DNA of 64,000 bases from Setoptus koraiensis (taxonomy: Eukaryota > Animalia > Arthropoda): positions 18,290,001 to 18,354,000 of the forward strand of contig CM106586.1 of the NCBI GenBank assembly GCA_048013815.1, read 5' to 3'. Position 1 is the stretch's first letter. Every line of letters begins with the position of its first letter. The translations under genes and the position numbers were made by a program. Under the pieces are notes generated by a model. The model saw nothing but the letters and a program-made list of their open reading frames with translations, ran no database searches and was not told where the DNA came from. Positions 969 to 56,413 of the stretch are shown here, piece by piece.

Positions 969-3697
969 ACAGTGCGCAGAGACGCACAGGCGAGGGCAGA
1001 GATGATAAAACGAATTCGAGATAAAACGAAACGAAACGACACAGGGGCCATCACAGAGATAACGGTCGCATCAATTCGGAGACACACAGCCGATGGCTGG
1101 GCTGGCTTAATTAGCGAGCGCCTGTAATAAGCATGCTAATGGGTAATGCGCAAATGAAACATGCAACATTACGATGGCATGTATGTTAATTAGCGAGCGA
1201 GCCGCTTGTTGCTGTCGGTGTGTGTGTGTTATCATACAGTGTAAAGATTGCGTCAGTTGTTGCGATTACGTCAGTTGCCCCTGTTGTTGTACTACAACAG
1301 TTGTAGAGAGTGTGTGTGTGTGTAATTAAGCGGCACATTGCAACACTAATCAGGATTTGCTTGTTGTCAGCTGGAAGTGCGCTCTGATTTATTAATGAAA
1401 CCTCCATTAGCGCGATCTCTCACGACTATTACGAGGCCACCGGTCAGCCGACTGGCCGGCCGTTGGCCAACTGCCCGCTGCCCGCTGCCCGCTGCTCACT
1501 GCTCACTGCCACCGAGCGGCCACCGAGCGGCCACAACACGCCGACAGGTGAGCGGATCCGTCTGATCTGGATCAATTCACAGCTGATATCAGGCCAATTG
1601 TGAGCGTTCACAGGCCGCCAGCGAAAGTGCGCATGCCATCGGATGTTTGTTTGCAAAGAAGAGCCGACTTGGCGTGCCGAGGGCCCGGGGCTCAACGGAC
1701 AACACCCAGGCTCACCTTTGCTGTGACTCACGGCCTGACAACGCTCGAGCCCAATGGAAGGCGCTCGAGCTGCTCGCTGAACGCAAGGCGAGCGTCCGAG
1801 GCGAATTATCAGAGTTATCAGAGGCGAACTGTCAGATGATCCGACAAAAGGCAAATACTGGCAAGTCAAACAGCGGCCGATACGAGCAGCCAACGGCGTG
1901 GACAATGGTCAATCGCCAGTGGCCAGCCGTTACACGTTGCATGTTTGTGTCAGAGCGAGTGCTGGCGTCGGACAGGTGCGACAACAGTTGGCTACCTGTT
2001 GTTGTTGTCGTCGCTGTTGTCGGTGTCGCCGTTGTTGTGTGTCTATGTTGCTGTTTGTCGTTGTTGTTGTTGTTGTTTGTCGTTGTTGATTTGCATCTAT
2101 TGAGAGCACGAACTAACTGGCCGCTACCGTGCAGTGCGCTGTCTCGGTCACGAAATAATCACACACTCGCACTCACTGTTACATTGCAGCCGAGCTAAAC
2201 TGAACCCGGCCGAACCCGGCCAGCGCACACAAGCCCACCAAAGCAACGCTGACCAAACGAAAACGGACCGAACCAACACTGACCAAGCGAACGCTGACCA
2301 AGCGAACGCTGGCCAGGCCAAGTGTGCGTGCCAGCGAAAATCGATTGATTTGGCAAGCTCATGAGCGCGCTCGCTGTGTCCGGTGTGACAACTTTCTCGC
2401 TGCGGCTCCGATGGGCAGCGCCTGCCTTTTTGGGCCTGACGCTGGCCGGCGCCGGCCAGCATCGCCCAACGTTGCCCGATATCGCCTAATGTCGGCCGAA
2501 ATCGGCCGAAATCGACTGATATCTCCGGTCCGCGCTCGTCGGCCTAATGTCGCCGATGTTGCGATATCGGGCCGGCGAGCGCAGAATGGCCAGACCCGAG
2601 CGGCGAGACCCGAGCAGCCAGACCCGAGCGGCCAGACCCGAGCGGCCAGAGCCGAGCCGCCAGAGCGACAGACGCGGGCCAGCAAGCGAAAGGCCAAATA
2701 TGAAAATAACGGGCGAGCGCAAAATGACGGGCGAGCGAAAGTAACGGGCGAGCGAAAATGACAGGCTTGCGAGCCAACAGCAAACGAGCGCCAGACGGTG
2801 GTTGCTGTGGCTGTTATCTCGCTGCCGAAATCGTGCACCGTCGTCGGCTGACCGCTCGTCCATGGACATGTCAATATTTGGTCTGCGCTCGGCCGTTGCT
2901 CGGTTTGGCGCTCGGCCGGCCGCTCGGCTCGGCGCTGGCTCGGCGCTGGCTCGACCGCATCAAACGATGTCGACCGGGTCAGGCGCCGAATGAGAGCATA
3001 GTCCACGGCTGACCCAACGGCAAAAACACGAGCTCGCCGGACAACAGAAACATGACGATGCGGTCACTCATCAATCAACTCGTTGGTCGTGGATGGTCGC
3101 TGGCGAGTGGCAAGTGGCGAGTCGCCGAGTGGTGACCAATAAACAAACACCGGACAAACTTGTGAAACTTGTCGGTATGTCCATTGAATGGCACGCACCG
3201 AGAAACGGTGGCGCCGCCGCAGCCATTCAATGGAATTTCCATTATTGTCGAGTCTCTATTTGAATAATAATTTGGCCCGTTGCGCCACACCAAACGCCAA
3301 ATAGCGAGAGAGCACAATGGCGGCGTTGCGCGAACGCTAAATGGCCGCGTCGCTCGGTCCGAGACTCTCGGAGCGGCATTGTGGGCGCGTTTGCGCAAGC
3401 GGCCACCATTAGCCATTGGCCAATGGCCGTTTAAACGCAAATGCAACTCAAATGGCGCCATCACTTGATGCAGATCTAATCTCATTGTTCGCGATATTTA
3501 TTCACGAGCGCCGCTCGCTCGCCAATTTGCCGATTCGGCCAACTTTTTGGCCCGCTTGCCCACTCTGGCAGCTCTGGCAACTTTGCCGACTCTGGCAACC
3601 GTTGCGTCGCTTCGCAATGTTGGTGTCCGGCAGACGGAAACGGGTCACCAACTGAGACAAAAGAGTCGCGCGCAACACCGCAGCGCCACCAGCAACA

Positions 3698-11391: not shown

Positions 11392-13310
11392 ATGGATGGA
11401 GACGATTTTGCCTCAATCCAGCTACTGGGCACCTTGAATGATGGCTTCAAATCTAATGATTTTAACACTGATGTAGCGAAATATTTTCGCATCTTTCAAG
11501 AGGAAAGTATTGTCGATCACTCTTTCACAATCAACGAGGGCCTCAGGAATGAAGCAAACTCACTGACCATTTCAAACGCCATTGTCAACAATAACAAACC
11601 AAAAAACCAAGCCTGCCATGTAGTATTTCATCCAAGTAATAGTCAACAACTAGGATCAATTAAACAGGAATTCGCACAACCTATTGTCTATGATTCTAGC
11701 TTTAAACAACTAGATCTGCAACAACAACACCAACAATTCTTACAACTACAACAACAGTCAATGGTAGATGTTCAATATGTCTACTATGATGATATTAATT
11801 GCCAGCATAATATTCATCACTCATCATCTCACCAAAGAGCTGATATTGGAACTAATAATCTCCTAGTAGCACAAAATATTACTAATACCAGTAGTAACGC
11901 TTGTAGTGGTAGTGTCAATAGTGGTAGTAGTAATAGCAATGATAACGGTGTGCTCTTAGTCCCTGATTCGAAAACACTAATCAACACTTTTATCAAGTGT
12001 CAAAATTGTAATCTCAAATTCAAGTCACAAGAAACACATGATAATCACGCTCGTTGTCACTCACAAAATGGAACCAGTGGTTTCAATTGTTACCTTTGCG
12101 AATTCACACGAAAGAAATGGGCTAGTCTAGCCAACCATTTATGGTCAGCGCACAAAATAGATTTGGAATTATCCAAATGTGACAAATGTGAATATAGAAC
12201 TTACAGTCAAAGCATACTAGATAGAGTCCATCTAGCAACTCACGGAGAAGAAAGAAATTTCCTATGTGAAACTTGCGATAAACGTTTCAAAACTATTAAG
12301 CAGCTCCAAAATCATAAGGTAACTATCAGGTTCAGAATAACAAAGTTAATAGACTCCATCTGAATCTAAAACCTTCTTGATATTCTGTATTATGCACGCA
12401 ATACTAACCTATATTTTTGATTGGTTTTTTCATTGTATCAATTCTCATAATGCCCAACTCCCTAGTCTACTCACAATGGTGATATCAAACCAAAGCCAGA
12501 AGTAGTCACCAGAAGTTGCGAAACTTGCCATAAGGAACTTAAAGATAAGAAGTCATTAGATAAACACATCAAAGTAGTTCACAATCGGGTAAAAAATCAT
12601 CCTTGCACTCTTTGTTCCTATAAAGCTCATTCAAGAGGTACCTTACTGACTCACATACGAGCTCAGCATACTGGTAAGTTTACTTCGCCAATTCATAATA
12701 TTTGTTATTTTCTATCAACATTAGATTGTCAACATTAGATTAACCTTTATCTTGACTTACAAATTCTTTATTGTTCACCAAAAGGAGAAAAACCTCATCG
12801 TTGTCAATTCGACCAGTGTCAGTTTTCCACTTCTGATCACAACTCATTTAGGAGACACAAATTGCGCCATGAAGGACACTATCCGTACAATTGTCCTTTC
12901 TGTGAATACCGCTCAATACAGGTAAGCATATTGGTGGAAAAACAATTATTTTCCAAATAGAGTTGGATCGAGTAACAATTGAAACAATATATCATCATCA
13001 TACTTCATCTCTGTCTCTCCCTCTCTTTCAAACTAACCAGTCCTGCTCATACAAGGACCATCTAAAGAAACACAAGAAAGAACCAAGACTGAACGAATAT
13101 CTATTTACTTGCGAAAACTGTGGATTCACTACTATCAACAAATCAAAACTGGCATCTCACCAATTTGCATGTAACAAAAGCGATGTAGAGAATAACATAG
13201 TCAGTAGCGATGAATGTTCCATCGGAAGTGCCTCCTCTTTTACATCGAATGCTCTAGCATCTGCTGCGTCCACTGGTAGAAGTGTCGTGACAGCACGGTA
13301 CCATTTATAA
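11392..13310 (+). CDS. C2H2 zinc-finger protein with about 9 fingers and a Q/N/S-rich N-terminus, about 513 aa
   Basis: Exons 11392-12318, 12466-12673, 12785-12921 and 13041-13310 (1542 nt, in frame). Fingers include CQNC..H..CH, CYLC..HLWSAH, CDKC, CETC..HKSTH, CETC..HIKVVH, CTLC..HIRAQH, a TGEKPH linker, CQFDQC..HKLRH, CPFC..HLKKH and CENC..HQFAC. Confidence 0.9.
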
Positions 13311-13427: not shown

Positions 13428-15869
13428 TTATGATATACCAGGAGATAGTACGCTGTGATATGCTGGCGTCCAACCTGATAGATAGTCCCAATTATATGTA
13501 CCTGTTAAATCAACTGTATTTACTAATTGAATAGGAACACCAGGTATATTGGTCCATTTATCTAATGTTGGCGTTGCGCTCCTCTGGTGGGGGCATGTGG
13601 GTAGTTGATGAGTTGGTGGTTGTTTACTGATGGTTAGCTGACTACCACCAGATGCAAGAATCATCATTGATGCATCATTAATAGATTGATATGGATGGGG
13701 TGCCAAATGATTACTATGTGCAGAGTACATGGTCTGGTATGGATTGGTAGTGGGTATATTGTTGGTGCTAGACATGATGCCATTGACATGATGATGACTA
13801 CCATAACTTCCGTCTCCTTTAAATTGACCACTATTAGTTGAAAGAGCTAGTCCTGCTTCTATGTAAGTTGACTCTTGCTTGTTTTTTGCTCGATAGGCAA
13901 ATGTCAGAACAAATATACAAAATAAACATATTATAGCTATGAATATGGACCCTGATGTCATTTGATTGATGAGAGTTTCACTTGATATTGAAGAGTTTAG
14001 TGCCCCGGGTGTGTGTCGATCGCTCGAGTTTTCGATAGCTTGGCTGTCTCCTATGTGGATTTCAATGGTCCTAGTTGTTATCGAAGAAGGACTAAAATCA
14101 TTACCATCGCTAGCTGTCAGAGTGAGCTTGAAGACGGACTTGCTTGAGCGATCCAATTCTCCCTTTACAACCAATAGATAAGTAGTTGGATCTTGGCTAT
14201 TCAGTTCGAATTTTCCATCTCCACCACTCAATTGTAATAGGAATAATTGTTGTTTAGTACTATCGACATTCTTTTGAGGATTGATGGCATTGGGGGAATC
14301 GGCGTCCTCGATTGTAACTCTGGCGATCACCTCGCCAGGTTTTATACTCTCACTAATAACTGGGTTTCTATTTTCTGTCAAAAACAATATATTAATAGTT
14401 GGTGGATTGTCATTGACATCTATCACATTAATAGTAACAATAGTGTAGGTTTTCAGCGATTGAACTCCTCCGTCTCTAGCCTCGATAACCAGTTCGTGAA
14501 CTGGCTCTGTTTCAAAATCGAGCTCTCTAACTAGGAATATTTTTCCTGTGTCGGGATTAATGCCAAAGTAAGGAGCATTTGGCGATTGTACGAAATTATT
14601 CTCTATACGTATATCATTATCTAGAGTATCGCCACTTATATATCCAGGATAGGTTTTAGTTGGCTCTAAGGTGGTAGACTTGATTGTTGTTGATGTGGGC
14701 TGTTGTTGAGAGTGCCCTGTTCTTTTCAATATGTGATAGGTGATTTGACCATTTTGATCAGCATCGGGATCATGGGCTTCGACTTGTAATATTGTTGTGC
14801 CAGTGATCGCGTTCTCTTTGACCTCTCCTTCATATCTGTCTTGCTTAAAGACGGGTTTGTTGTCATTCAAATCTTGCACAGTTATATCTACTACAAGCTG
14901 ACCAACAAGAGGGGGCGATCCACCATCGATGGCCTCAATGGTCAGTTGGTAGGAGGAAACATTTTCACGATCAAGCGGAGCATTAGCCACCTCCAGATCC
15001 ACATAGAGCATATCACCGGTTCTGTTTTGTATTAATTTGAAGATGTCATTCTTATTGCCCGAGACAATTTTATATTCTTTGATACCAAATTGTGTTGAAT
15101 CTTGATCAATTGCAACAGGTAGGGATCTTCTGGCACCCTTGCTACCCTCAGGCAAAGCAAAAGATGTTTTATTGTTAGGCAAAAATGTGGGCCTATTATC
15201 GTTGACGTCCCGAACAATGATGGTGCATGTTATTTCAACACCATTGGATGCAATGGCTAAGAACGAGTATTGATCTTTGAATTCGCGATCTAATACCACT
15301 GTAGTTCTTATTTCGCCTGTTGCGTGATTGATATTGAGCGCACTTCTAATCTCTTCTTCCCTTGTCTGGTGCGTGGGCAATATGAGAAATGGTGGCTGGC
15401 CTTGAGGCGACTTGATAAAGCCAACAAGCGTGTTGTTGGGCAAATTCTCACCTATTTCAAATTTGAGATCATTGAAATTATGAGATTGTTGTTGTTGTTG
15501 TTGTTGCTGATATGAGGGAGTAGTTTTTGTTTGGGTAGATTGTGATGATGATTGTGAGGTAATTTGTGATTGTGGTTGCTGTTGCGGTTGCTGTTGTTGC
15601 TGGGGTCTGGCTAGAATTTGTTGAGTGCTCACAGATAATGTGATAATAAAAAACAATATGATTACAGTATGATTAAGCAACATAAAATTATGTTTTGCCC
15701 GAATGTGATTCATTGTGCATTTTTCGTTAGAATTAAATGTATTATTGTGCATTTGTGTTGGCTGCTTTCGGGCGAAGCCAACAATATTATTATTACTTAA
15801 ATAATCTTGTCTGTGTCTTGTTGAGGTGGACAAGTGTAATTGGTGGCTATGTTGGCTTGTATGATACAT
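13428..15869 (-). CDS. Single-exon Dachsous-like cadherin: signal peptide, 4 cadherin repeats, TM helix and short tail with a YNWDYL motif
   Basis: The 826-codon open frame contains the hydrophobic signal LLNHTVIILFFIITLSVS and the cadherin motifs LDRE, DVNDN, DLNDN, LDFE and DVNDN. The TM segment is SIFIAIICLFCIFVLTFAY followed by RAKNK, and the tail is GTYNWDYLSGWTPAYHSV. In-frame ATGs lie at 15869 (813 aa) and 15713 (761 aa); the ORF-track start 15908 is TTG. Confidence 0.9.
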   Translation of the reverse strand: MYHTSQHSHQLHLSTSTRHRQDYLSNNNIVGFARKQPTQMHNNTFNSNEKCTMNHIRAKHNFMLLNHTVIILFFIITLSVSTQQILARPQQQQQPQQQPQSQITSQSSSQSTQTKTTPSYQQQQQQQQSHNFNDLKFEIGENLPNNTLVGFIKSPQGQPPFLILPTHQTREEEIRSALNINHATGEIRTTVVLDREFKDQYSFLAIASNGVEITCTIIVRDVNDNRPTFLPNNKTSFALPEGSKGARRSLPVAIDQDSTQFGIKEYKIVSGNKNDIFKLIQNRTGDMLYVDLEVANAPLDRENVSSYQLTIEAIDGGSPPLVGQLVVDITVQDLNDNKPVFKQDRYEGEVKENAITGTTILQVEAHDPDADQNGQITYHILKRTGHSQQQPTSTTIKSTTLEPTKTYPGYISGDTLDNDIRIENNFVQSPNAPYFGINPDTGKIFLVRELDFETEPVHELVIEARDGGVQSLKTYTIVTINVIDVNDNPPTINILFLTENRNPVISESIKPGEVIARVTIEDADSPNAINPQKNVDSTKQQLFLLQLSGGDGKFELNSQDPTTYLLVVKGELDRSSKSVFKLTLTASDGNDFSPSSITTRTIEIHIGDSQAIENSSDRHTPGALNSSISSETLINQMTSGSIFIAIICLFCIFVLTFAYRAKNKQESTYIEAGLALSTNSGQFKGDGSYGSHHHVNGIMSSTNNIPTTNPYQTMYSAHSNHLAPHPYQSINDASMMILASGGSQLTISKQPPTHQLPTCPHQRSATPTLDKWTNIPGVPIQLVNTVDLTGTYNWDYLSGWTPAYHSVLSPGIS

Positions 15870-42526: not shown

Positions 42527-43732
<1,206 letters not shown>

Positions 43733-46863: not shown

Positions 46864-48216
46864 TTAAGTTCTAACTTGGAATGTTCCAGCTTTCGTTATA
46901 TACTTAACTCCTTTAAATGGCTTATATTTTTCGCCAAACATATCCAATCTATTGACTCGAACATCTGAGATGGAGGCTTGATCAATTGTAAACTTGACTA
47001 ATATAGTTGGATTGAAGCCAGGACTTTCTGTGTTTGATTGTAAACTTAGAGTACCTTTTAGAGAAGCTGTCTTGGACTCCAGACGGCCAACTTCCCAAAT
47101 GAATAACTTAGTTGATGGACTAAATGAATATTTCCCTTGAGATTGATTGAGAATTACATTCACTACGTTTTTTGGCATGACTATTTCCAACGTTACATTT
47201 TCCAGGACTTTACCCATAAGACGCTTAGGGCCGACTTGCAGTTCCAGTTTACCACTGGACGGATCCTTGAACGATATAAGCTGTTTAACATATAGTGGCA
47301 CAGCAATTAGGCTCTGAGTCCCAATATGATATGTCATCAACCTGAAGTTACCATCAGGAGGAACAAAGGAAAGCAATCTATCTGATTCCCATCTTCTATG
47401 CCTAACACAAGGATGAAAACTGACATCATCAAAAAGCCTAGAATTGACAAATGATAAGCTCAAATCAGGCATACCAGACAACTTGACACAACAGTCTATG
47501 TGTCCGTTGATTTCTGCTGACACGATTCCCCCATTTTTATCTATGATTGCGTCTATTTCTTCTATGACATCAAAGTAAGCCTCATTATTGGCGTATTTGA
47601 TGCCCAATTTTCTCCAAGGTACATTAGACATTTGATTTGCTGGTAGTGTTTCGCTTATGTTTGTTCGACCTGTGACGGAATTGGCAATGGTACGAAGTAG
47701 ATTGGGTGGTCTTATTAATTCTTTGAGGACGTTAGATTCGGTTGCGAATGGAAATCCAGCATCTAGCATCTCATCAAGTAGTTCGTATATAGTAACTAGT
47801 TGCTCTTTAAATAAATTTTCATTGCAGTCATTAAAATAGTTGACAATAATATCAACAATCCTATGAAGGAATTCGATAACAAATAATGGAGATATTTCGT
47901 TTGTGACCACAGCAACAAAAAATAGATTATTGTGGTAGATGTTGATCAAGTGCCTGTGGGGTGTTATAATAATGGGTGAAATATCATTCAAGTTTGGATT
48001 CTTCTGCAATAGATTGGTCAAATATTCTAGGTCGCTGCGGGGTACCACTTTTTGCCAGTGCTTCTCCAAAATCAGGTCCCTGGGAAGATGTAGAAAAATG
48101 ATGAAGAGTGTTGAGAGTTGGAGATATATTTATGGGCCTGGTGAAATCAATGGATTGAGTGAACTGTGAGCAACTTACCCTCCTGAGTTAACTACAAACA
48201 ATGAGTCGATCAGCAT
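46864..48216 (-). CDS. AP3M1: AP-3 complex mu subunit (carmine-like), about 417 aa
   Basis: Exon 1 48216-48179 (MLIDSLFVVNSG) splices to 48079-46864 (GDLILEKHW...YANNEAYFDVIEEIDAIIDK...LSGMPDL...FHPCVR...YKPFKGVKYITKAGTFQVRT). Confidence 0.95.
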
Positions 48217-50557: not shown

Positions 50558-52045
50558 TTATCTCGGAGAGTTGTAAGTTTTTGGTCCTGGGGACGAGCCA
50601 CTTCCTGAGCCTCCCCTTCTCAACAGAGGAAAACCAGATGTTATTCCGCCAGGCCTTATCTGACCAGGTTGATTTAGAATCATGTTCGCGTGAGGTGAAT
50701 GTAATGCAGTGGATGTGCCTTGGGTCTCACAAAACTGTTTAAATGCCTGTGCTGATCTATCGTAATCCTGCTTCGTCAACCTTGGAGCAGCATGTGGAGG
50801 GGCATGTCTGAAGGGAGGCTGGATCACTCGCAGATCTTTAAGATCTTTGGGGTTGAAAGGCGGCGGATAGAACTGCGGTCCGAGTGGACCACCGGGTAGG
50901 CCTGAATTTCAAAGAAAAATGAAGTTAAAGAAGCTATCAATTATGTTTTGGTAAAATATCGAAAAAGATATCAGGCTTAACTTACCAGGTGTAGGTTGAT
51001 AGGCGAATGCGGGGCTACCGAAACCTTGATAATTTGGACTTGATTCATGCGATGACCTTGATGATTCATATTGACTCCTTCTCGGTTGCGATGCTCTATC
51101 TCCAGTTAAGTTTTTTAATCCGTTAGAACTTTGATCCATACGATTACCAGATAGTTGAGAAGGAGGATTAGGACGTAACTGAGGAGGCTGAGGCGGTGTA
51201 AGGTGGAATTGTCCATGTTGAGAAAGGTAGCTTTTTCTGGGTGAGGAGACCAGTTGGTCACGAGGATCATTAGAACCACTAGGGTAGGCCCTTTTCAGAG
51301 AATTTGAGTTAGAATTCGACTCTAAATTTCTGGAGGGGGACTGTTCTATGGGGATCATTGGTCTTAGAGGCACGCTCATTCGCATATTTGTCCCGGAAAC
51401 TGGCATAGATATTGGAGGCATACTCATTCTTGGTGAGTACAATCCAATCGGTCGAGGAGGGAGTACGTTCATATGTGGATGAGGCGGTACATGATTGTCG
51501 AGATGGTACGGATAGATATGAGGCATGGGAATCGGCATCCTGGGCTGGTTTAATGTAACATCTTTGCTAGGTTTGATAGATTGCTGATTTGAGGTATTAT
51601 TCACGAGAGTTATCGGAGTTGATTGCTGCTGTTGATGAATCCCTTCTAACTTAGTTTGCTGCGGTTGCTGTTGATGCTGCTGCAGTTGCAATTGATTAGC
51701 GTGATTGGCTACTTGTTGAGCTTGTGAGGCAGCCAATATCTCCGCTTCACGTTGCTTTTGGCGAGCTACTTCTTCGTTAAGTACTTTTTTCAATTGTGCA
51801 AAAAGATTATGTTTTTCATCTTTCAGATTGTTGAGTTTCTTCTCTAATGCGGCCAGTTGTTCTTTGATTTGATCTAATGTCATTGCATCTTGTCTCCTTT
51901 GCTGTTCACGTTCTTTTTTAAGACGTTTTTCTATGGCATCCTGCTCCATTTCTTGTTTGAGCCGTTGTCTCTTCCTCATGATATGATTCTTCAAGGCCCC
52001 TTTCATGGCTGAATCAATGGTAGATGCCTTCTGTACGAAAATCAT
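50558..52045 (-). CDS. GPS2: G protein pathway suppressor 2-like corepressor subunit, about 467 aa
   Basis: Exons 52045-50986 and 50901-50558 (in frame). The coiled-coil AMKGALKNHIMRKR...MTLDQIKEQLAALEKKLNNLKDEKHNLFAQLKKVLNEE matches the GPS2 N-terminus and is followed by a Q/P-rich tail. The true first exon may lie further upstream. Confidence 0.85.
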
Positions 52046-54684: not shown

Positions 54685-56413
54685 ATGCAATATAATGATG
54701 GCGACCTGGCGGATGCAAGTTATGATCATCAGACCAGACACCTAGAATCATCGAGTCGATCGAACTTTCTTCAAATAGAACAAAACAAAGTCAAATATAA
54801 AGCCATTATCGGATTACATACAAGACCTAGAGTCCTCTTGGAACATCGACATGATACTCTGACACAGTTAAATCTCGAACCCCTGTATACCACTAATTCT
54901 ATTGAGATACCACAGAGATTTCCACCTGAGATTATTATAAGAATTCTGCGATTAGCTCTGCTGGAAGAACCAAGACCTCTTCGGCAACTTGTTAGATTTA
55001 GCCGAGTATGTGAAACATGGAGAAGAATAGTTAATGAGAACTCTTCAATTTGGGTTCGATTGGATACCAACGAAATATTGCCTAGCTTGACTGACAATTT
55101 ACAATATTTTAAGCAAATTTCCGAGACAAACACTTTCAGTTCCTGCAGAGATTTAGTTCTTGGATCCGACACACTATTCCTAAAGTCATTCCGCGAAACT
55201 AGCTTGAAAATTAGCCCAAAATGTCTGAGTTACATCGTACAGATCAATCCTATCTTTGAATCAATACTTCGTAAAGCCCTACCAAACTCGAGGAGGCTTT
55301 ACTTAACGAACAGCAGTGAGATTGTGAAACGACATGCAGAAATAATTGAGTCGCATTGTACCAATGTTACGGCCATTGAACTGGGTGCTGACGATGTCGA
55401 ACGTGGCACCACAATCTTCAACAATCTTAATCCTAACATCATTACTGAACGATTGCTCAAAACGGCAAGTGCCACCTTAAGGGAAGTGTATATTCACTAC
55501 CCGTATCAGGTTTCAACACTATTATCTCGTCTTGCGAAACACTGTAAACAATTGACTCATCTAGAGCTGGGAATCCTTAAACAGGGACGTGAAACAATCA
55601 AACAGGATGATGAAGATAGCGACTCTGATGGAAGTTCTTCTTCGGACGATGAAGATCAAACTCAATGCATTGATCCCAAGTTGATTTCCGCTAACTTTCT
55701 ACATTTGAAGGTTTTCTCTTGTTACTCTTATGAGTTCACACGACATAGCGCTGCCCCAGCAGTTCTGACTGAGATGATTGATCTCCGCGAACTGAGGCTA
55801 CCTATTCTAAAAGGATGTGACCAAACTAGAGACGAGTGGACGCTTAGAACACTAGCACAAAGTTCCACAAGATTGATTCATTTAGACGCCAGGGGATGTT
55901 TCCTAAAAGTCTTTTCCCTTGGTTGGCTTACAACTAACAAGCTAAGATCTCTGCATCTTCACTATTCTGTTCCAGCCGCTGCAATTTTGAAACGTTGGTC
56001 AAATAGTTTGGTTTATCTAACGCTCTCTAAAGTATCCGAGAAGTATCGAGAACATAGAAGCCAAGGTCCGCCAAATCCATCCCAAGAGCTGGATGCGTGT
56101 TTAGAGACTTTGTCTGGTGCTGAGACTCCTAAACTGAAGTACCTGGACCTCAGCGACTCAGATTGCGGCTTTTTGCCAGTCAGGTGCGTCTTTTTTGGGG
56201 CCATGAAATACTAAACTAAGATGGATAACTTTATAATGACTCCTCTCTAACTTTTTCCTTTTTATTCTATATAGAAATTTGGTTGGCCATTGCAAAGAGC
56301 TCGAGTATTTAAACCTCTCAAAGTGTAAACGCATACCAATAAATGTACGGGTGTGCTTTTCAGACAAACAAGCGATAGAGGAGTTAAGAATGAGCTTCGC
56401 CGATTCTCTCTAG
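54685..56413 (+). CDS. F-box/LRR protein, FBXL6-like, about 545 aa
   Basis: Exons 54685-56183 and 56275-56413. F-box FPPEIIIRIL...FSRVCETWRRIV..SSIW, LRR-like repeats (LRELRLP, LIHLDARGC, LKYLDLSDSD) and terminal CKELEYLNLSKCKRIP. The FBXL6 assignment is from recalled similarity. Confidence 0.85.

What the first reader, a model, noticed from the sequence alone, without database searches (positions are those of the whole stretch)
13428..15869. Mini-Dachsous: a single-exon cadherin reduced to EC1-4, a TM helix and the Ds tail motif
Seen in sequence: one uninterrupted ORF with a signal peptide, exactly four cadherin repeats, a TM helix and the tail GTYNWDYLSGWTPAY. Established: Dachsous has about 27 EC repeats (over 3000 aa), binds Fat through EC1-4, and carries a conserved YNWDYLLxWGP cytoplasmic motif. 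The repeats align in order with recalled Ds EC1-4 (e.g. GEIRTTVVLDRE, YKIVSGN..F.L, GGSPPL.G..V.ITVQDLNDN, DVNDNPPTINI.FL...P.ISES.KPGE.IAR, GGDGKFEL). Inference: either a miniaturised Ds suited to very small cells, or a Ds paralog acting as a short-range Fat ligand or decoy in planar polarity/Hippo signalling. I do not know of a described 4-repeat Ds.
Basis: partly seen in the sequence, partly recalled or inferred. Interest (0 to 1): 0.82.

Follow-up and report, generated by a model that had tools for sequence, protein, structure and literature searches.

The report
Miniature four-repeat Dachsous of mites
This mite genome encodes the planar-polarity cadherin Dachsous cut from about 27 repeats to its four-repeat Fat-binding head, a membrane anchor and a stub of its tail; similar shrunken genes are conserved in at least 26 related mite sequences, which offers a natural test of why the protein is normally so large.

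Summary
Window 13428-15869 (-) is one intact ORF encoding a signal peptide, four folded cadherin repeats, a TM helix and a 150-aa tail that ends in GTYNWDYLSGWTPAY.

The repeats are orthologous, one by one, to Dachsous EC1-4. In the tree the protein sits inside the bilaterian Ds clade, apart from Fat and the protocadherins. The tail matches the first half of the Ds "D motif" (hhalign 97.7%).

It is not an artefact.
- An 87%-identical syntenic orthologue exists, and the mature protein has dN/dS 0.064.
- Twenty-four further mini-Ds proteins of 493-1205 aa turned up, including UniProt "Protein dachsous" of the eriophyoid Aceria tosichella.
- All four relatives' genes whose DNA range I checked are intronless.

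Nearly all of those relatives have gone further and keep only EC1-3 plus a stub of EC4. The window's lineage is the only four-repeat form and is sister to the others.

Lost parts are EC5-27, the other conserved blocks of the Ds tail, and the Four-jointed serine, which is now Asp. Key Fat-contact residues are kept.

Most likely it is a short trans ligand for a Fat-type partner. I could not verify that partner. The paralogue or decoy reading is not supported. I found no published description of the truncation, so this is a new variant of a known kind.

The parts
13428..15869 (-). Whole mini-dachsous ORF (813 codons plus stop), single exon
   Evidence: The orthologue L001:742-3135 is also one ORF.
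15609..15713 (-). Probable true start (Met53) and signal peptide MNHIRAKHNF...STQQILA
   Evidence: Sequence checked. The Met is conserved in P0001, whereas the upstream 52 aa have dN/dS 0.75.
15480..15608 (-). Gln/Ser-rich linker between signal peptide and EC1
   Evidence: It is less constrained: dN/dS 0.23 for residues 53-130.
15180..15479 (-). EC1 (residues 131-230)
   Evidence: Pfam Cadherin_FAT4_N. Best hit is D. melanogaster Ds residues 30-121. Matches the Ds-EC1 HMM at 79 bits. Folded in the AF2 model.
14856..15179 (-). EC2 (residues 231-338), ending in the DLNDN calcium linker
   Evidence: Best hit is Ds residues 122-230, 88 bits against 43 for any other repeat. Ds-EC2 HMM 95 bits.
14400..14855 (-). 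EC3 (residues 339-490)
   Evidence: Best hit is Ds residues 231-338. The Ds-EC3 HMM matches in two pieces on either side of the insert.
14838..14840 (-). Asp344 at the Four-jointed site (D-x-N-D-x7-S/T)
   Evidence: Ser in 13 of 13 other Ds aligned; Asp in the window and in P0001. The motif is defined in Medina 2023.
14577..14717 (-). 47-aa disordered low-complexity insert in the EC3 beta3-beta4 loop, just after the Arg equivalent to DCHS1 R297
   Evidence: AF2 pLDDT below 50; alignments.
14046..14399 (-). EC4 (residues 491-608). The usual DxNDN linker to an EC5 is absent.
   Evidence: Best hit is Ds residues 339-443, 72 bits against 34 for any other repeat. Ds-EC4 HMM 69 bits. Arg517 corresponds to DCHS1 R387.
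13956..14045 (-). 30-aa Ser/Asn-rich stalk with NSS sequons
13881..13955 (-). Transmembrane helix (residues 639-663)
   Evidence: AF2 helix; hydropathy maximum; dN/dS 0.04 for stalk plus TM.
13431..13880 (-). Cytoplasmic tail, 150 aa, predicted disordered
   Evidence: dN/dS 0.045. Blocks conserved among the mites are listed.
13818..13880 (-). Juxtamembrane block KQESTYIEAGLALSTNSGQFK, conserved across the mite family
   Evidence: Conservation profile of 24 mite tails.
13434..13532 (-). Remnant of the Ds D motif (IQLVNTVDLTGTYNWDYLSGWTPAYHSVLSPGI)
   Evidence: hhalign of mite tails against Ds tails: 97.7%, E 2e-12 over 32 columns. BLASTP against the D. melanogaster Ds tail: 12 of 18 identical, E 8e-7.

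Best explanation
This is the mite's dachsous gene, reduced by loss of EC5-27 and most of the tail. What remains is an 813-aa (probably 761-aa) type I membrane protein: signal peptide, the Fat-binding head EC1-4, a 30-aa stalk, a TM helix, and a 150-aa tail that keeps the first half of the D motif. Shown here: its orthology to Ds, its four-repeat architecture, strong purifying selection, and its membership of a family of at least 26 mini-Ds proteins in eriophyoid-type mites. The window's lineage is the only one that still has EC4. Inferred: it still acts as a trans ligand for a Fat-type cadherin on the neighbouring cell through the antiparallel EC1-4 interface. If so, it forms a bridge of only four repeats on the Ds side instead of a giant one. 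This would happen without tuning by Four-jointed, because the phospho-serine is replaced by Asp and fj is reported absent in eriophyoids. It would also happen without Dachs, which is reported absent too. The remaining half of the D motif and the mite-specific juxtamembrane block would then hold whatever cytoplasmic partners are left, for example a Lowfat-like protein or the Fat tail. I put the identity as a reduced Ds orthologue at about 0.93 and the Fat-ligand mechanism at about 0.5.
For: Architecture.

Orthology:
- The best colinear PDB hit is human PCDH16/DCHS1 EC1-4 (235 bits).
- Each EC hits the same-numbered repeat of D. melanogaster Ds by a clear margin, and the tail hits Ds 3325-3343 and nothing in Fat.
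- In the ML tree the mites lie inside the bilaterian Ds clade (100/97) as sister to the other arthropod Ds (96/91), with Fat and protocadherins outside.
- The tail-to-D-motif profile match is 97.7%. The motif GSYNWDYLLDWGPQ is present in all recovered full-length Ds.

A real gene:
- The P0001 orthologue is more than 94% identical over the mature part. dS is 0.45 and dN/dS 0.064, with EC1-2 at 0.014 and the tail at 0.045.
- The 5.3-kb contig is colinear and includes the neighbouring zinc-finger gene.
- Twenty-four further mini-Ds were found, including A. tosichella A0A6G1SNR1.
- The gene is intronless in L001, L002, L004 and L006.
- dN/dS is 0.12 within the three-repeat clade.

Fat binding is plausible:
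- The equivalents of DCHS1 R297, V331 and R387 are kept, V120 is Ile as in other arthropods, and F347 is Ile.
- The calcium linkers EC1-2, EC2-3 and EC3-4 are intact.
- Medina 2023 shows that the interface spans EC1-4, and that Dchs1 EC1-3 alone binds Fat4 with KD 0.98 uM against 0.47 uM for EC1-4.
Against: - No Fat partner was verified. Greenhalgh 2020 could not identify a fat orthologue in A. lycopersici. My metagenome scan with a Fat EC1-8 profile found no recognisable mite Fat. The 'mini-Fat' notes for this genome are unchecked first-stage notes.
- In the three-repeat relatives the critical R297 is mostly His and F347 mostly Thr, so the canonical interface may not be conserved across the family.
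- The EC3 insert sits next to the R297 equivalent.
- The second half of the D-motif block (VFSEIARLKDE) is missing. The paper's D-II and D-III sub-regions are both needed for full Lowfat binding, but I could not map them onto the remnant.
- I could not search the rest of this genome for a second, full-length ds.
- No expression data exist for this species.
Confidence: 0.6

Rival explanations
1. Orphaned Ds. The gene does descend from dachsous, but Fat has been lost or changed beyond recognition. The mini-Ds then works through another partner: homophilic adhesion like a protocadherin, or binding in cis or trans to a different receptor.
For: Greenhalgh 2020 report fat, fj and dachs as absent in A. 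lycopersici while ds is present. The three-repeat clade has replaced R297 and F347. All mites share Glu at the T126 position, and all carry large loop inserts in EC2 or EC3. No mite Fat was recovered. Structurally, protocadherin EC1-4 homodimers are the next-best matches.
Against: In the window's lineage the Fat-contact residues R297, V331 and R387 are all retained, and EC1-2 is almost frozen (dN/dS 0.014). Exactly the biochemically defined Fat-binding module is what survives. A much-shortened Fat could easily escape an orthogroup analysis. First-stage notes report two reduced Fat-like genes in this genome, but these are unchecked.
Confidence: 0.25
2. A Ds paralogue, acting as a short-range ligand or decoy, that coexists with a normal full-length ds elsewhere in the genome.
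For: I could not search the whole genome. The mite branch is long (about 1.25 substitutions per site), as might be expected for a diverging duplicate.
Against: The exhaustive HMMER search of 1.84 billion representatives returned no long cadherin above 40% identity to this protein, although it did return the short orthologue P0001. Greenhalgh 2020 name a single ds gene in A. lycopersici. All 26 mite sequences form one clade that is sister to the other arthropod Ds. No other cadherin-coding DNA lies in the 64-kb window.
Confidence: 0.07
3. Artefact: an assembly collapse between EC4 and the TM segment, or the first exon of a long ds read through into unrelated sequence.
For: In other arthropods the first coding exon of ds also encodes EC1-5, and it is often mispredicted as a protein of about 580-620 aa.
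Against: The same head-TM-tail architecture appears in independent assemblies from many samples. The stalk, TM and tail are under strong purifying selection (dN/dS 0.04). The tail carries the genuine Ds D motif in frame. The junction lies at the end of EC4, not at the conserved end of exon 1, which falls just past EC5.
Confidence: 0.02
4. A member of another short cadherin family, such as a delta or clustered protocadherin, that only resembles Ds.
For: Protocadherin EC1-4 structures and sequences score highly, as they do for any cadherin.
Against: The tree puts protocadherins and Fat outside the Ds clade that holds the mites, with 100/97 support. BLAST bit scores to Ds N-termini are 171-311, against 166 or less for Fat and protocadherins. 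EC4 and the tail match only Ds.
Confidence: 0.02

Closest known systems
Dachsous (Drosophila Ds, Q24292, 3503 aa; vertebrate DCHS1/PCDH16 and DCHS2/PCDH23)
   Same: EC1, EC2, EC3 and EC4 are positional orthologues of the same Ds repeats. It is a type I single-pass protein. The tail carries the Ds-specific core (L-x-G-S/T-Y-N-W-D-Y-L-x-x-W-x-P-x-Y) of the D motif. The Fat-contact residues R297, V331 and R387 are kept.
   Different: It has 4 repeats instead of 27. The tail is 150 aa instead of about 340-490 aa. These tail blocks are missing: SSGRGSAED..EEIRMINE, PDSGIQQDDD, EYLARLGI, VFSEIARLKDE, PPPLIT, SPSFSPSLSPL and the C-terminal E-L/F-R-I. The Four-jointed serine, invariant in the 13 other Ds aligned, is Asp. 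The gene is intronless. EC3 carries a 47-aa loop insert.
Three-repeat mini-Ds of other eriophyoid-type mites (for example UniProt A0A6G1SNR1, 'Protein dachsous', Aceria tosichella, 1093 aa; P0108, P0298-P0321)
   Same: Same origin: one clade with 100% support. Same head-TM-tail plan, the same tail ending GSYNWDYLxDWxPEYH, the same juxtamembrane block, and intronless genes under purifying selection.
   Different: Nearly all of them have lost EC4 except for a stub of about 55 aa. They carry large low-complexity inserts in both EC2 and EC3. R297 is replaced, mostly by His. The Four-jointed site is mostly Lys. The window protein and P0001 are the only four-repeat members found, and the most conservative ones.
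Recombinant Dchs1(EC1-4) and Dchs1(EC1-3) constructs (PDB 8egx, 8egw; Medina et al. 2023)
   Same: The natural protein keeps the fragment that was engineered as the minimal Fat4-binding unit. Its three-repeat relatives match the EC1-3 construct, which still binds with KD about 1 uM.
   Different: Those are soluble laboratory fragments of a 27-repeat protein. Here the fragment is membrane-anchored, is the whole ectodomain, and has been maintained by selection.
Delta and clustered protocadherins (6-7 EC, single exon for the ectodomain and TM)
   Same: A short cadherin rod encoded without introns, with an antiparallel EC1-4 type fold.
   Different: They are not closest kin in the tree. They lack the Ds-type EC4 signature and the D motif, and they bind homophilically.

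Membership tests
Dachsous | N-terminal EC1-4 orthologous to Ds EC1-4 (the Fat-binding head) | tested here: met
   Per-repeat BLAST maps EC1-4 to D. melanogaster Ds 30-121, 122-230, 231-338 and 339-443. Ds-derived per-repeat HMMs match in the same order. The protein lies inside the Ds clade with 100/97 support.
Dachsous | Giant ectodomain of about 27 cadherin repeats | tested here: not met
   Four repeats only. There is no other cadherin-coding DNA in the window. I therefore file it as a reduced descendant (orthologue) of Ds, not as a typical member.
Dachsous | Single-pass type I topology | tested here: met
   Signal peptide and one TM helix.
Dachsous | Cytoplasmic D motif (64 aa; binds Lowfat, Dachs, Sple, Fat tail, MyoID) | tested here: inconclusive
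   The first ~32 columns align at 97.7% probability. The following VFSEIARLKDE part is absent. The paper's D-I, D-II and D-III borders could not be read because its figures are not held.
Dachsous | Other pan-bilaterian tail motifs (B, E and F of Tripathi & Irvine 2024) | tested here: not met
   The tail alignment shows none of the other blocks that are conserved among the nine complete full-length Ds tails. At most there are weak vestiges near the membrane.
Dachsous | Four-jointed phospho-site D-x-N-D-x7-S/T at the start of EC3 | tested here: not met
   Asp344 replaces the Ser that is invariant in 13 of 13 other Ds.
Dachsous | Conserved Fat-contact residues (DCHS1 V120, R297, V331, F347, R387) | tested here: met
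   The window protein has I, R, V, I and R at these positions. The residue roles come from Medina 2023.
Dachsous | Heterophilic trans binding to Fat | not testable with these tools
   No mite Fat sequence was available.
Fat / Fat-like cadherins | Fat-type EC1-4, EGF/LamG modules, Fat-type tail (LGWEYLLNWGP) | tested here: not met
   Fat N-termini form a separate clade. Pfam finds no EGF or LamG module. The tail has no BLAST hit in Fat.
Delta / clustered protocadherins | Six or seven EC repeats, grouping with protocadherin EC1-4 | tested here: not met
   Protocadherins fall outside the Ds-plus-mite clade, and the protein has four EC repeats.

The most novel reading that the evidence does not exclude
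Eriophyoid-type mites run a naturally minimised Fat-Dachsous system. Ds has been trimmed to the fragment that biochemistry defines as sufficient for Fat binding: EC1-4 here and EC1-3 in most relatives. Its Four-jointed switch is hard-wired (Ser to Asp) after loss of fj, and its tail is reduced to half a D motif after loss of Dachs. Ds probably co-shrank with Fat and Flamingo. If that system still polarises or sizes tissues, the giant length of Fat and Ds, conserved from cnidarians to humans, is not needed for the core function.
Probability: 0.35. Interest if true: 0.85.

Novelty: new variant of a known kind. Interest (0 to 1): 0.72.

Why it matters
Dachsous and Fat keep giant ectodomains of 27 and 34 repeats from cnidarians to humans, and nobody knows why that length matters. 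Here selection has kept a Ds of only three or four repeats for a long time in a species-rich group of very small animals. The same group is reported to have lost Four-jointed and Dachs.

What remains marks the indispensable core:
- the Fat-binding head;
- a membrane anchor;
- about 30 residues of the D motif, plus a short juxtamembrane block.

This gives ready-made constructs for two kinds of test: whether ectodomain length matters, by rescue of fly ds mutants, and which tail contacts are essential. It also suggests that orthogroup-based "gene loss" calls in streamlined genomes, such as the reported absence of fat, should be rechecked for drastically shortened orthologues.

Tried and rejected
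1. Tail-only word search. Residues 640-813 against proteins of 447-1423 aa found only P0001. This was too insensitive for a 20-aa motif. I settled the point instead by reading the C-termini of full-length Ds returned by the exhaustive search and by profile-profile comparison.
2. Metagenome scan for a mite Fat. A Fat EC1-8 profile returned 79 loci. Most complete ORFs among them are protocadherin-like (four to six linker motifs plus a TM). L049, from the same JGI sample as a mini-Ds contig, is an internal multi-repeat exon of ordinary composition. No recognisable mite Fat was found.
3. Greenhalgh 2020 supplements searched for aculy04g02000. No length or sequence is held there.
4. Synteny between the four-repeat and three-repeat loci. 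The neighbours differ: a zinc-finger gene here, a 7TM receptor in L004. This is uninformative.
5. Exon-skipping retrogene origin (exon 1 joined to the last exon). Rejected as the simple explanation, because the junction lies at the end of EC4 whereas the conserved first exon of other arthropods runs about 25 aa into EC6.
6. Flank conservation as a way to delimit the gene. L001 is about 83.5% identical over its whole 5.3 kb, coding and non-coding alike, so this says nothing.
7. Foldseek does not discriminate Ds from Fat or protocadherin heads.
Full report
**What is there.** Window 13428-15869 on the minus strand is one uninterrupted ORF of 813 codons from the first ATG. Pfam finds an N-terminal Cadherin_FAT4_N domain and further cadherin domains (E 1e-46).

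An AlphaFold2 model of residues 131-813, built on a 43-sequence alignment, shows the following:
- four well-folded cadherin domains, with pLDDT mostly above 90;
- a disordered 47-aa loop inside the third domain;
- a disordered 30-aa stalk;
- one transmembrane helix (residues 639-663);
- a disordered 150-aa tail.

Foldseek's best PDB matches are the Fat4 and Dchs1 EC1-4 chains of 8egw and 8egx. The three inter-repeat calcium linkers (DVNDN, DLNDN, DVNDN) are intact, and the linker that would lead into a fifth repeat is gone. One refinement: the first 52 codons evolve almost neutrally, and a conserved Met53 directly precedes a good signal peptide, so translation probably starts at 15713.

**It is Dachsous.**
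- The best colinear hit among solved structures is human protocadherin-16/DCHS1 EC1-4 (235 bits).
- Cut into single repeats, each mite repeat finds the same-numbered repeat of D. melanogaster Ds (Q24292) as its best match. EC1 maps to 30-121, EC2 to 122-230, EC3 to 231-338 and EC4 to 339-443. The margins over every other repeat of Ds or Fat are clear; for EC4 they are 72 against 34 bits.
- HMMs built from EC1-5 of non-mite arthropod Ds give EC1-EC2-EC3-EC4 in that order.
- BLAST scores to Ds N-termini are 171-311 bits, against 166 or less for Fat and protocadherins.
- In a maximum-likelihood tree of 51 heads, the mite sequences lie inside the bilaterian Ds clade (100/97). They are sister to all other arthropod Ds (96/91), on a long branch. 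Fat and protocadherins fall outside.

**The tail is a Ds tail, but only a fragment of one.** The exhaustive HMMER search returned full-length Ds of 3000-3550 aa. Cluster look-ups name several of them as dachsous, PCDH16 or PCDH23 from Drosophila, Lingula, Argopecten and fishes. The Nematostella one carries the automatic name 'protocadherin Fat 4', but it has the Ds motif and groups next to the Ds clade in the tree.

All of these carry GSYNWDYLLDWGPQ(Y/F)QPLAxVFxEIARLKDE in the tail. Fat carries the different LGWEYLLNWGP version.

The mite tail matches the D. melanogaster Ds tail at 12 of 18 positions (E 8e-7 for the pair). A profile of 13 mite tails matches a profile of nine Ds tails with 97.7% probability (E 2e-12) over 32 columns. 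Aligning whole tails shows that every other conserved block of Ds is absent, as is the second half of this block.

Tripathi & Irvine 2024 (PMC11634027) define six conserved tail motifs, A to F. They show that the 64-aa D motif, which overlaps the stretch similar to Fat, is necessary and sufficient for binding Lowfat, Dachs and Spiny-legs. It is also required for association with the Fat tail and MyoID. The block kept by the mite is the only one resembling Fat, so it must lie in D. I could not map the paper's D-I, D-II and D-III borders.

**It is a real, constrained gene.** P0001 (797 aa, from a Logan assembly) is 87% identical overall and more than 94% identical over the mature protein. Its 5.3-kb contig is colinear with window 16620-11257 and includes the convergent C2H2 zinc-finger gene.

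| Region (window against P0001) | dN/dS |
|---|---|
| Mature protein (dS 0.45) | 0.064 |
| EC1-2 | 0.014 |
| EC3 | 0.05 |
| EC4 | 0.20 |
| Stalk and TM | 0.04 |
| Tail | 0.045 |

tblastn with fly, tick and Lingula Ds and with a Fat finds no cadherin-coding DNA anywhere else in the 64-kb window. Assembly collapse and read-through of a first exon are therefore very unlikely.

**It belongs to a family.** A search seeded with a more distant hit, P0108, returned 24 further proteins of 493-1205 aa. One of them is UniProt A0A6G1SNR1, 'Protein dachsous', from the eriophyoid Aceria tosichella.
- Nearly all have the same plan. The tail motif GSYNWDYLxDWxPEYHTLMPLI lies close to the C-terminus in all but three, which lack it.
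- The four genes whose range I checked are intronless.
- A close pair within the family gives dN/dS 0.12, with the tail at 0.04.
- None of them has an EC4. Nearly all read EC1-EC2-EC3, with large low-complexity inserts in EC2 and EC3, followed by a stub of about 55 aa that still aligns with the first strands of EC4.
- The window protein and P0001 are the only four-repeat members. They are sister to the 24-member three-repeat clade; this is a quick tree with SH-aLRT 100, because the careful search did not finish.

The simplest history is a reduction from 27 to 4 repeats in a common ancestor, and then from 4 to 3 in one daughter lineage.

Earlier notes of this scan call the genome a gall-mite genome, and its two large pieces fit an eriophyoid karyotype. 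I did not verify the species.

**How it probably works.** Medina et al. 2023 (PMC9935876) show that Fat4 and Dchs1 bind head to tail through EC1-4 of each. Dchs1 EC1-3 binds almost as well as EC1-4 (KD 0.98 against 0.47 uM), while Fat4 needs its EC4. R297A in Dchs1 nearly abolishes binding, and R387 of EC4 is highly conserved. I anchored the numbering on the residues named in the paper, using the chain text and a bird orthologue.

| DCHS1 position | Window protein | Three-repeat clade | Other Ds aligned |
|---|---|---|---|
| R297 | Arg | mostly His | Arg in 11 of 13 |
| V331 | Val | mostly Leu | Val in 10 of 13 |
| R387 | Arg | mostly absent | Arg in 13 of 13 |
| V120 | Ile | mostly Ile | Ile in 7 of 13 |
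| F347 | Ile | mostly Thr | Phe in 11 of 13 |
| S258 (Four-jointed site) | Asp | mostly Lys | Ser in 13 of 13 |

Greenhalgh et al. 2020 (PMC7738191) report that the eriophyoid A. lycopersici lacks four-jointed and dachs, has ds, and has no identifiable fat.

Taken together, selection has kept the module that binds Fat, an anchor and a fragment of the partner-binding motif. It has discarded what depends on Fj and, plausibly, on Dachs. I therefore favour a short trans ligand for a Fat-type partner. With four repeats the rod would be roughly 18 nm long, taking about 4.5 nm per repeat from general knowledge of cadherins. That length suits junctions of ordinary width.

The weak point is the partner. 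I could not find a mite Fat. The two 'mini-Fat' notes and the 'mini-Flamingo' note for this genome are unchecked. The rival in which Ds has been re-used without Fat stays at about one in four.

**Known or new.** Two facts were already public: that eriophyoids have a ds gene (Greenhalgh 2020), and that a 1093-aa A. tosichella protein is automatically named dachsous. I found no paper that mentions the truncation. Only five papers in the library hold 'dachsous', 'mite' and 'genome' together, and only Greenhalgh 2020 is relevant; the 2026 eriophyoid genome preprint does not mention cadherins. I class it as a new, extreme variant of a known kind. The scan had already flagged the Asp at the Fj site on this same window (s1-345703).

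Noticed in passing
window 14838-14840 (-): Asp344 sits at the Four-jointed phospho-site (D-L-N-D-x7-D). It is Ser in 13 of 13 other Ds. Among the three-repeat relatives it is mostly Lys, with a few Thr or Ser. Greenhalgh 2020 report fj as absent in an eriophyoid. This was already noted by the scan as s1-345703.
   Followed up: partly
window 14577-14717 (-): A 47-aa disordered low-complexity insert lies in the EC3 beta3-beta4 loop, directly after the Arg equivalent to DCHS1 R297. All 24 three-repeat relatives carry variable inserts at the same site, and a second one in EC2. Those inserts are themselves under moderate constraint (dN/dS 0.12-0.19).
   Followed up: partly
window 15714-15869 (-): The first 52 codons of the ORF evolve almost neutrally (dN/dS 0.75), with indels relative to P0001. 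The real start is probably Met53 at 15713.
   Followed up: partly
window about 16000-37500: About 20 kb next to the mini-ds gene is GC-rich (50-61%, except about 43-47% at 28-32 kb, against 36-41% around the genes). It is full of short tandem repeats and has no convincing ORF. That is a surprisingly large gene-poor tract for so compact a genome; it may be a regulatory landscape or repeat-derived DNA.
   Followed up: no
window 11392-13310 (+): A C2H2 zinc-finger gene, apparently in two exons (11392-12363 and 12963-13310), lies convergent to mini-ds. The same neighbour is present in the related species (L001:4172-5158).
   Followed up: partly
window 42533-43732 (+), 46864-48069 (-), 50909-52045 (-), 54685-56214 (+): A proteasome AAA-ATPase and an AP-complex mu subunit each appear as a single long ORF, as do a G-protein pathway suppressor and an F-box protein. 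This fits a genome that has lost most introns.
   Followed up: no
EC1, position equivalent to DCHS1 T126 (window residue E212): All mite mini-Ds aligned (the window, P0001 and 22 three-repeat members) have Glu at a Fat4-contact position where other Ds have Asn, Thr, Leu or Val. This is a candidate co-evolved interface change.
   Followed up: no
L002:925-3471, L004:10001-11968, L006:10001-12937, L086:1259-3838: The three-repeat mini-Ds genes keep a stub of about 55 aa that aligns with the first strands of EC4; 8 of 22 still have the R387-equivalent Arg. The three-repeat state is therefore derived from a four-repeat one.
   Followed up: partly
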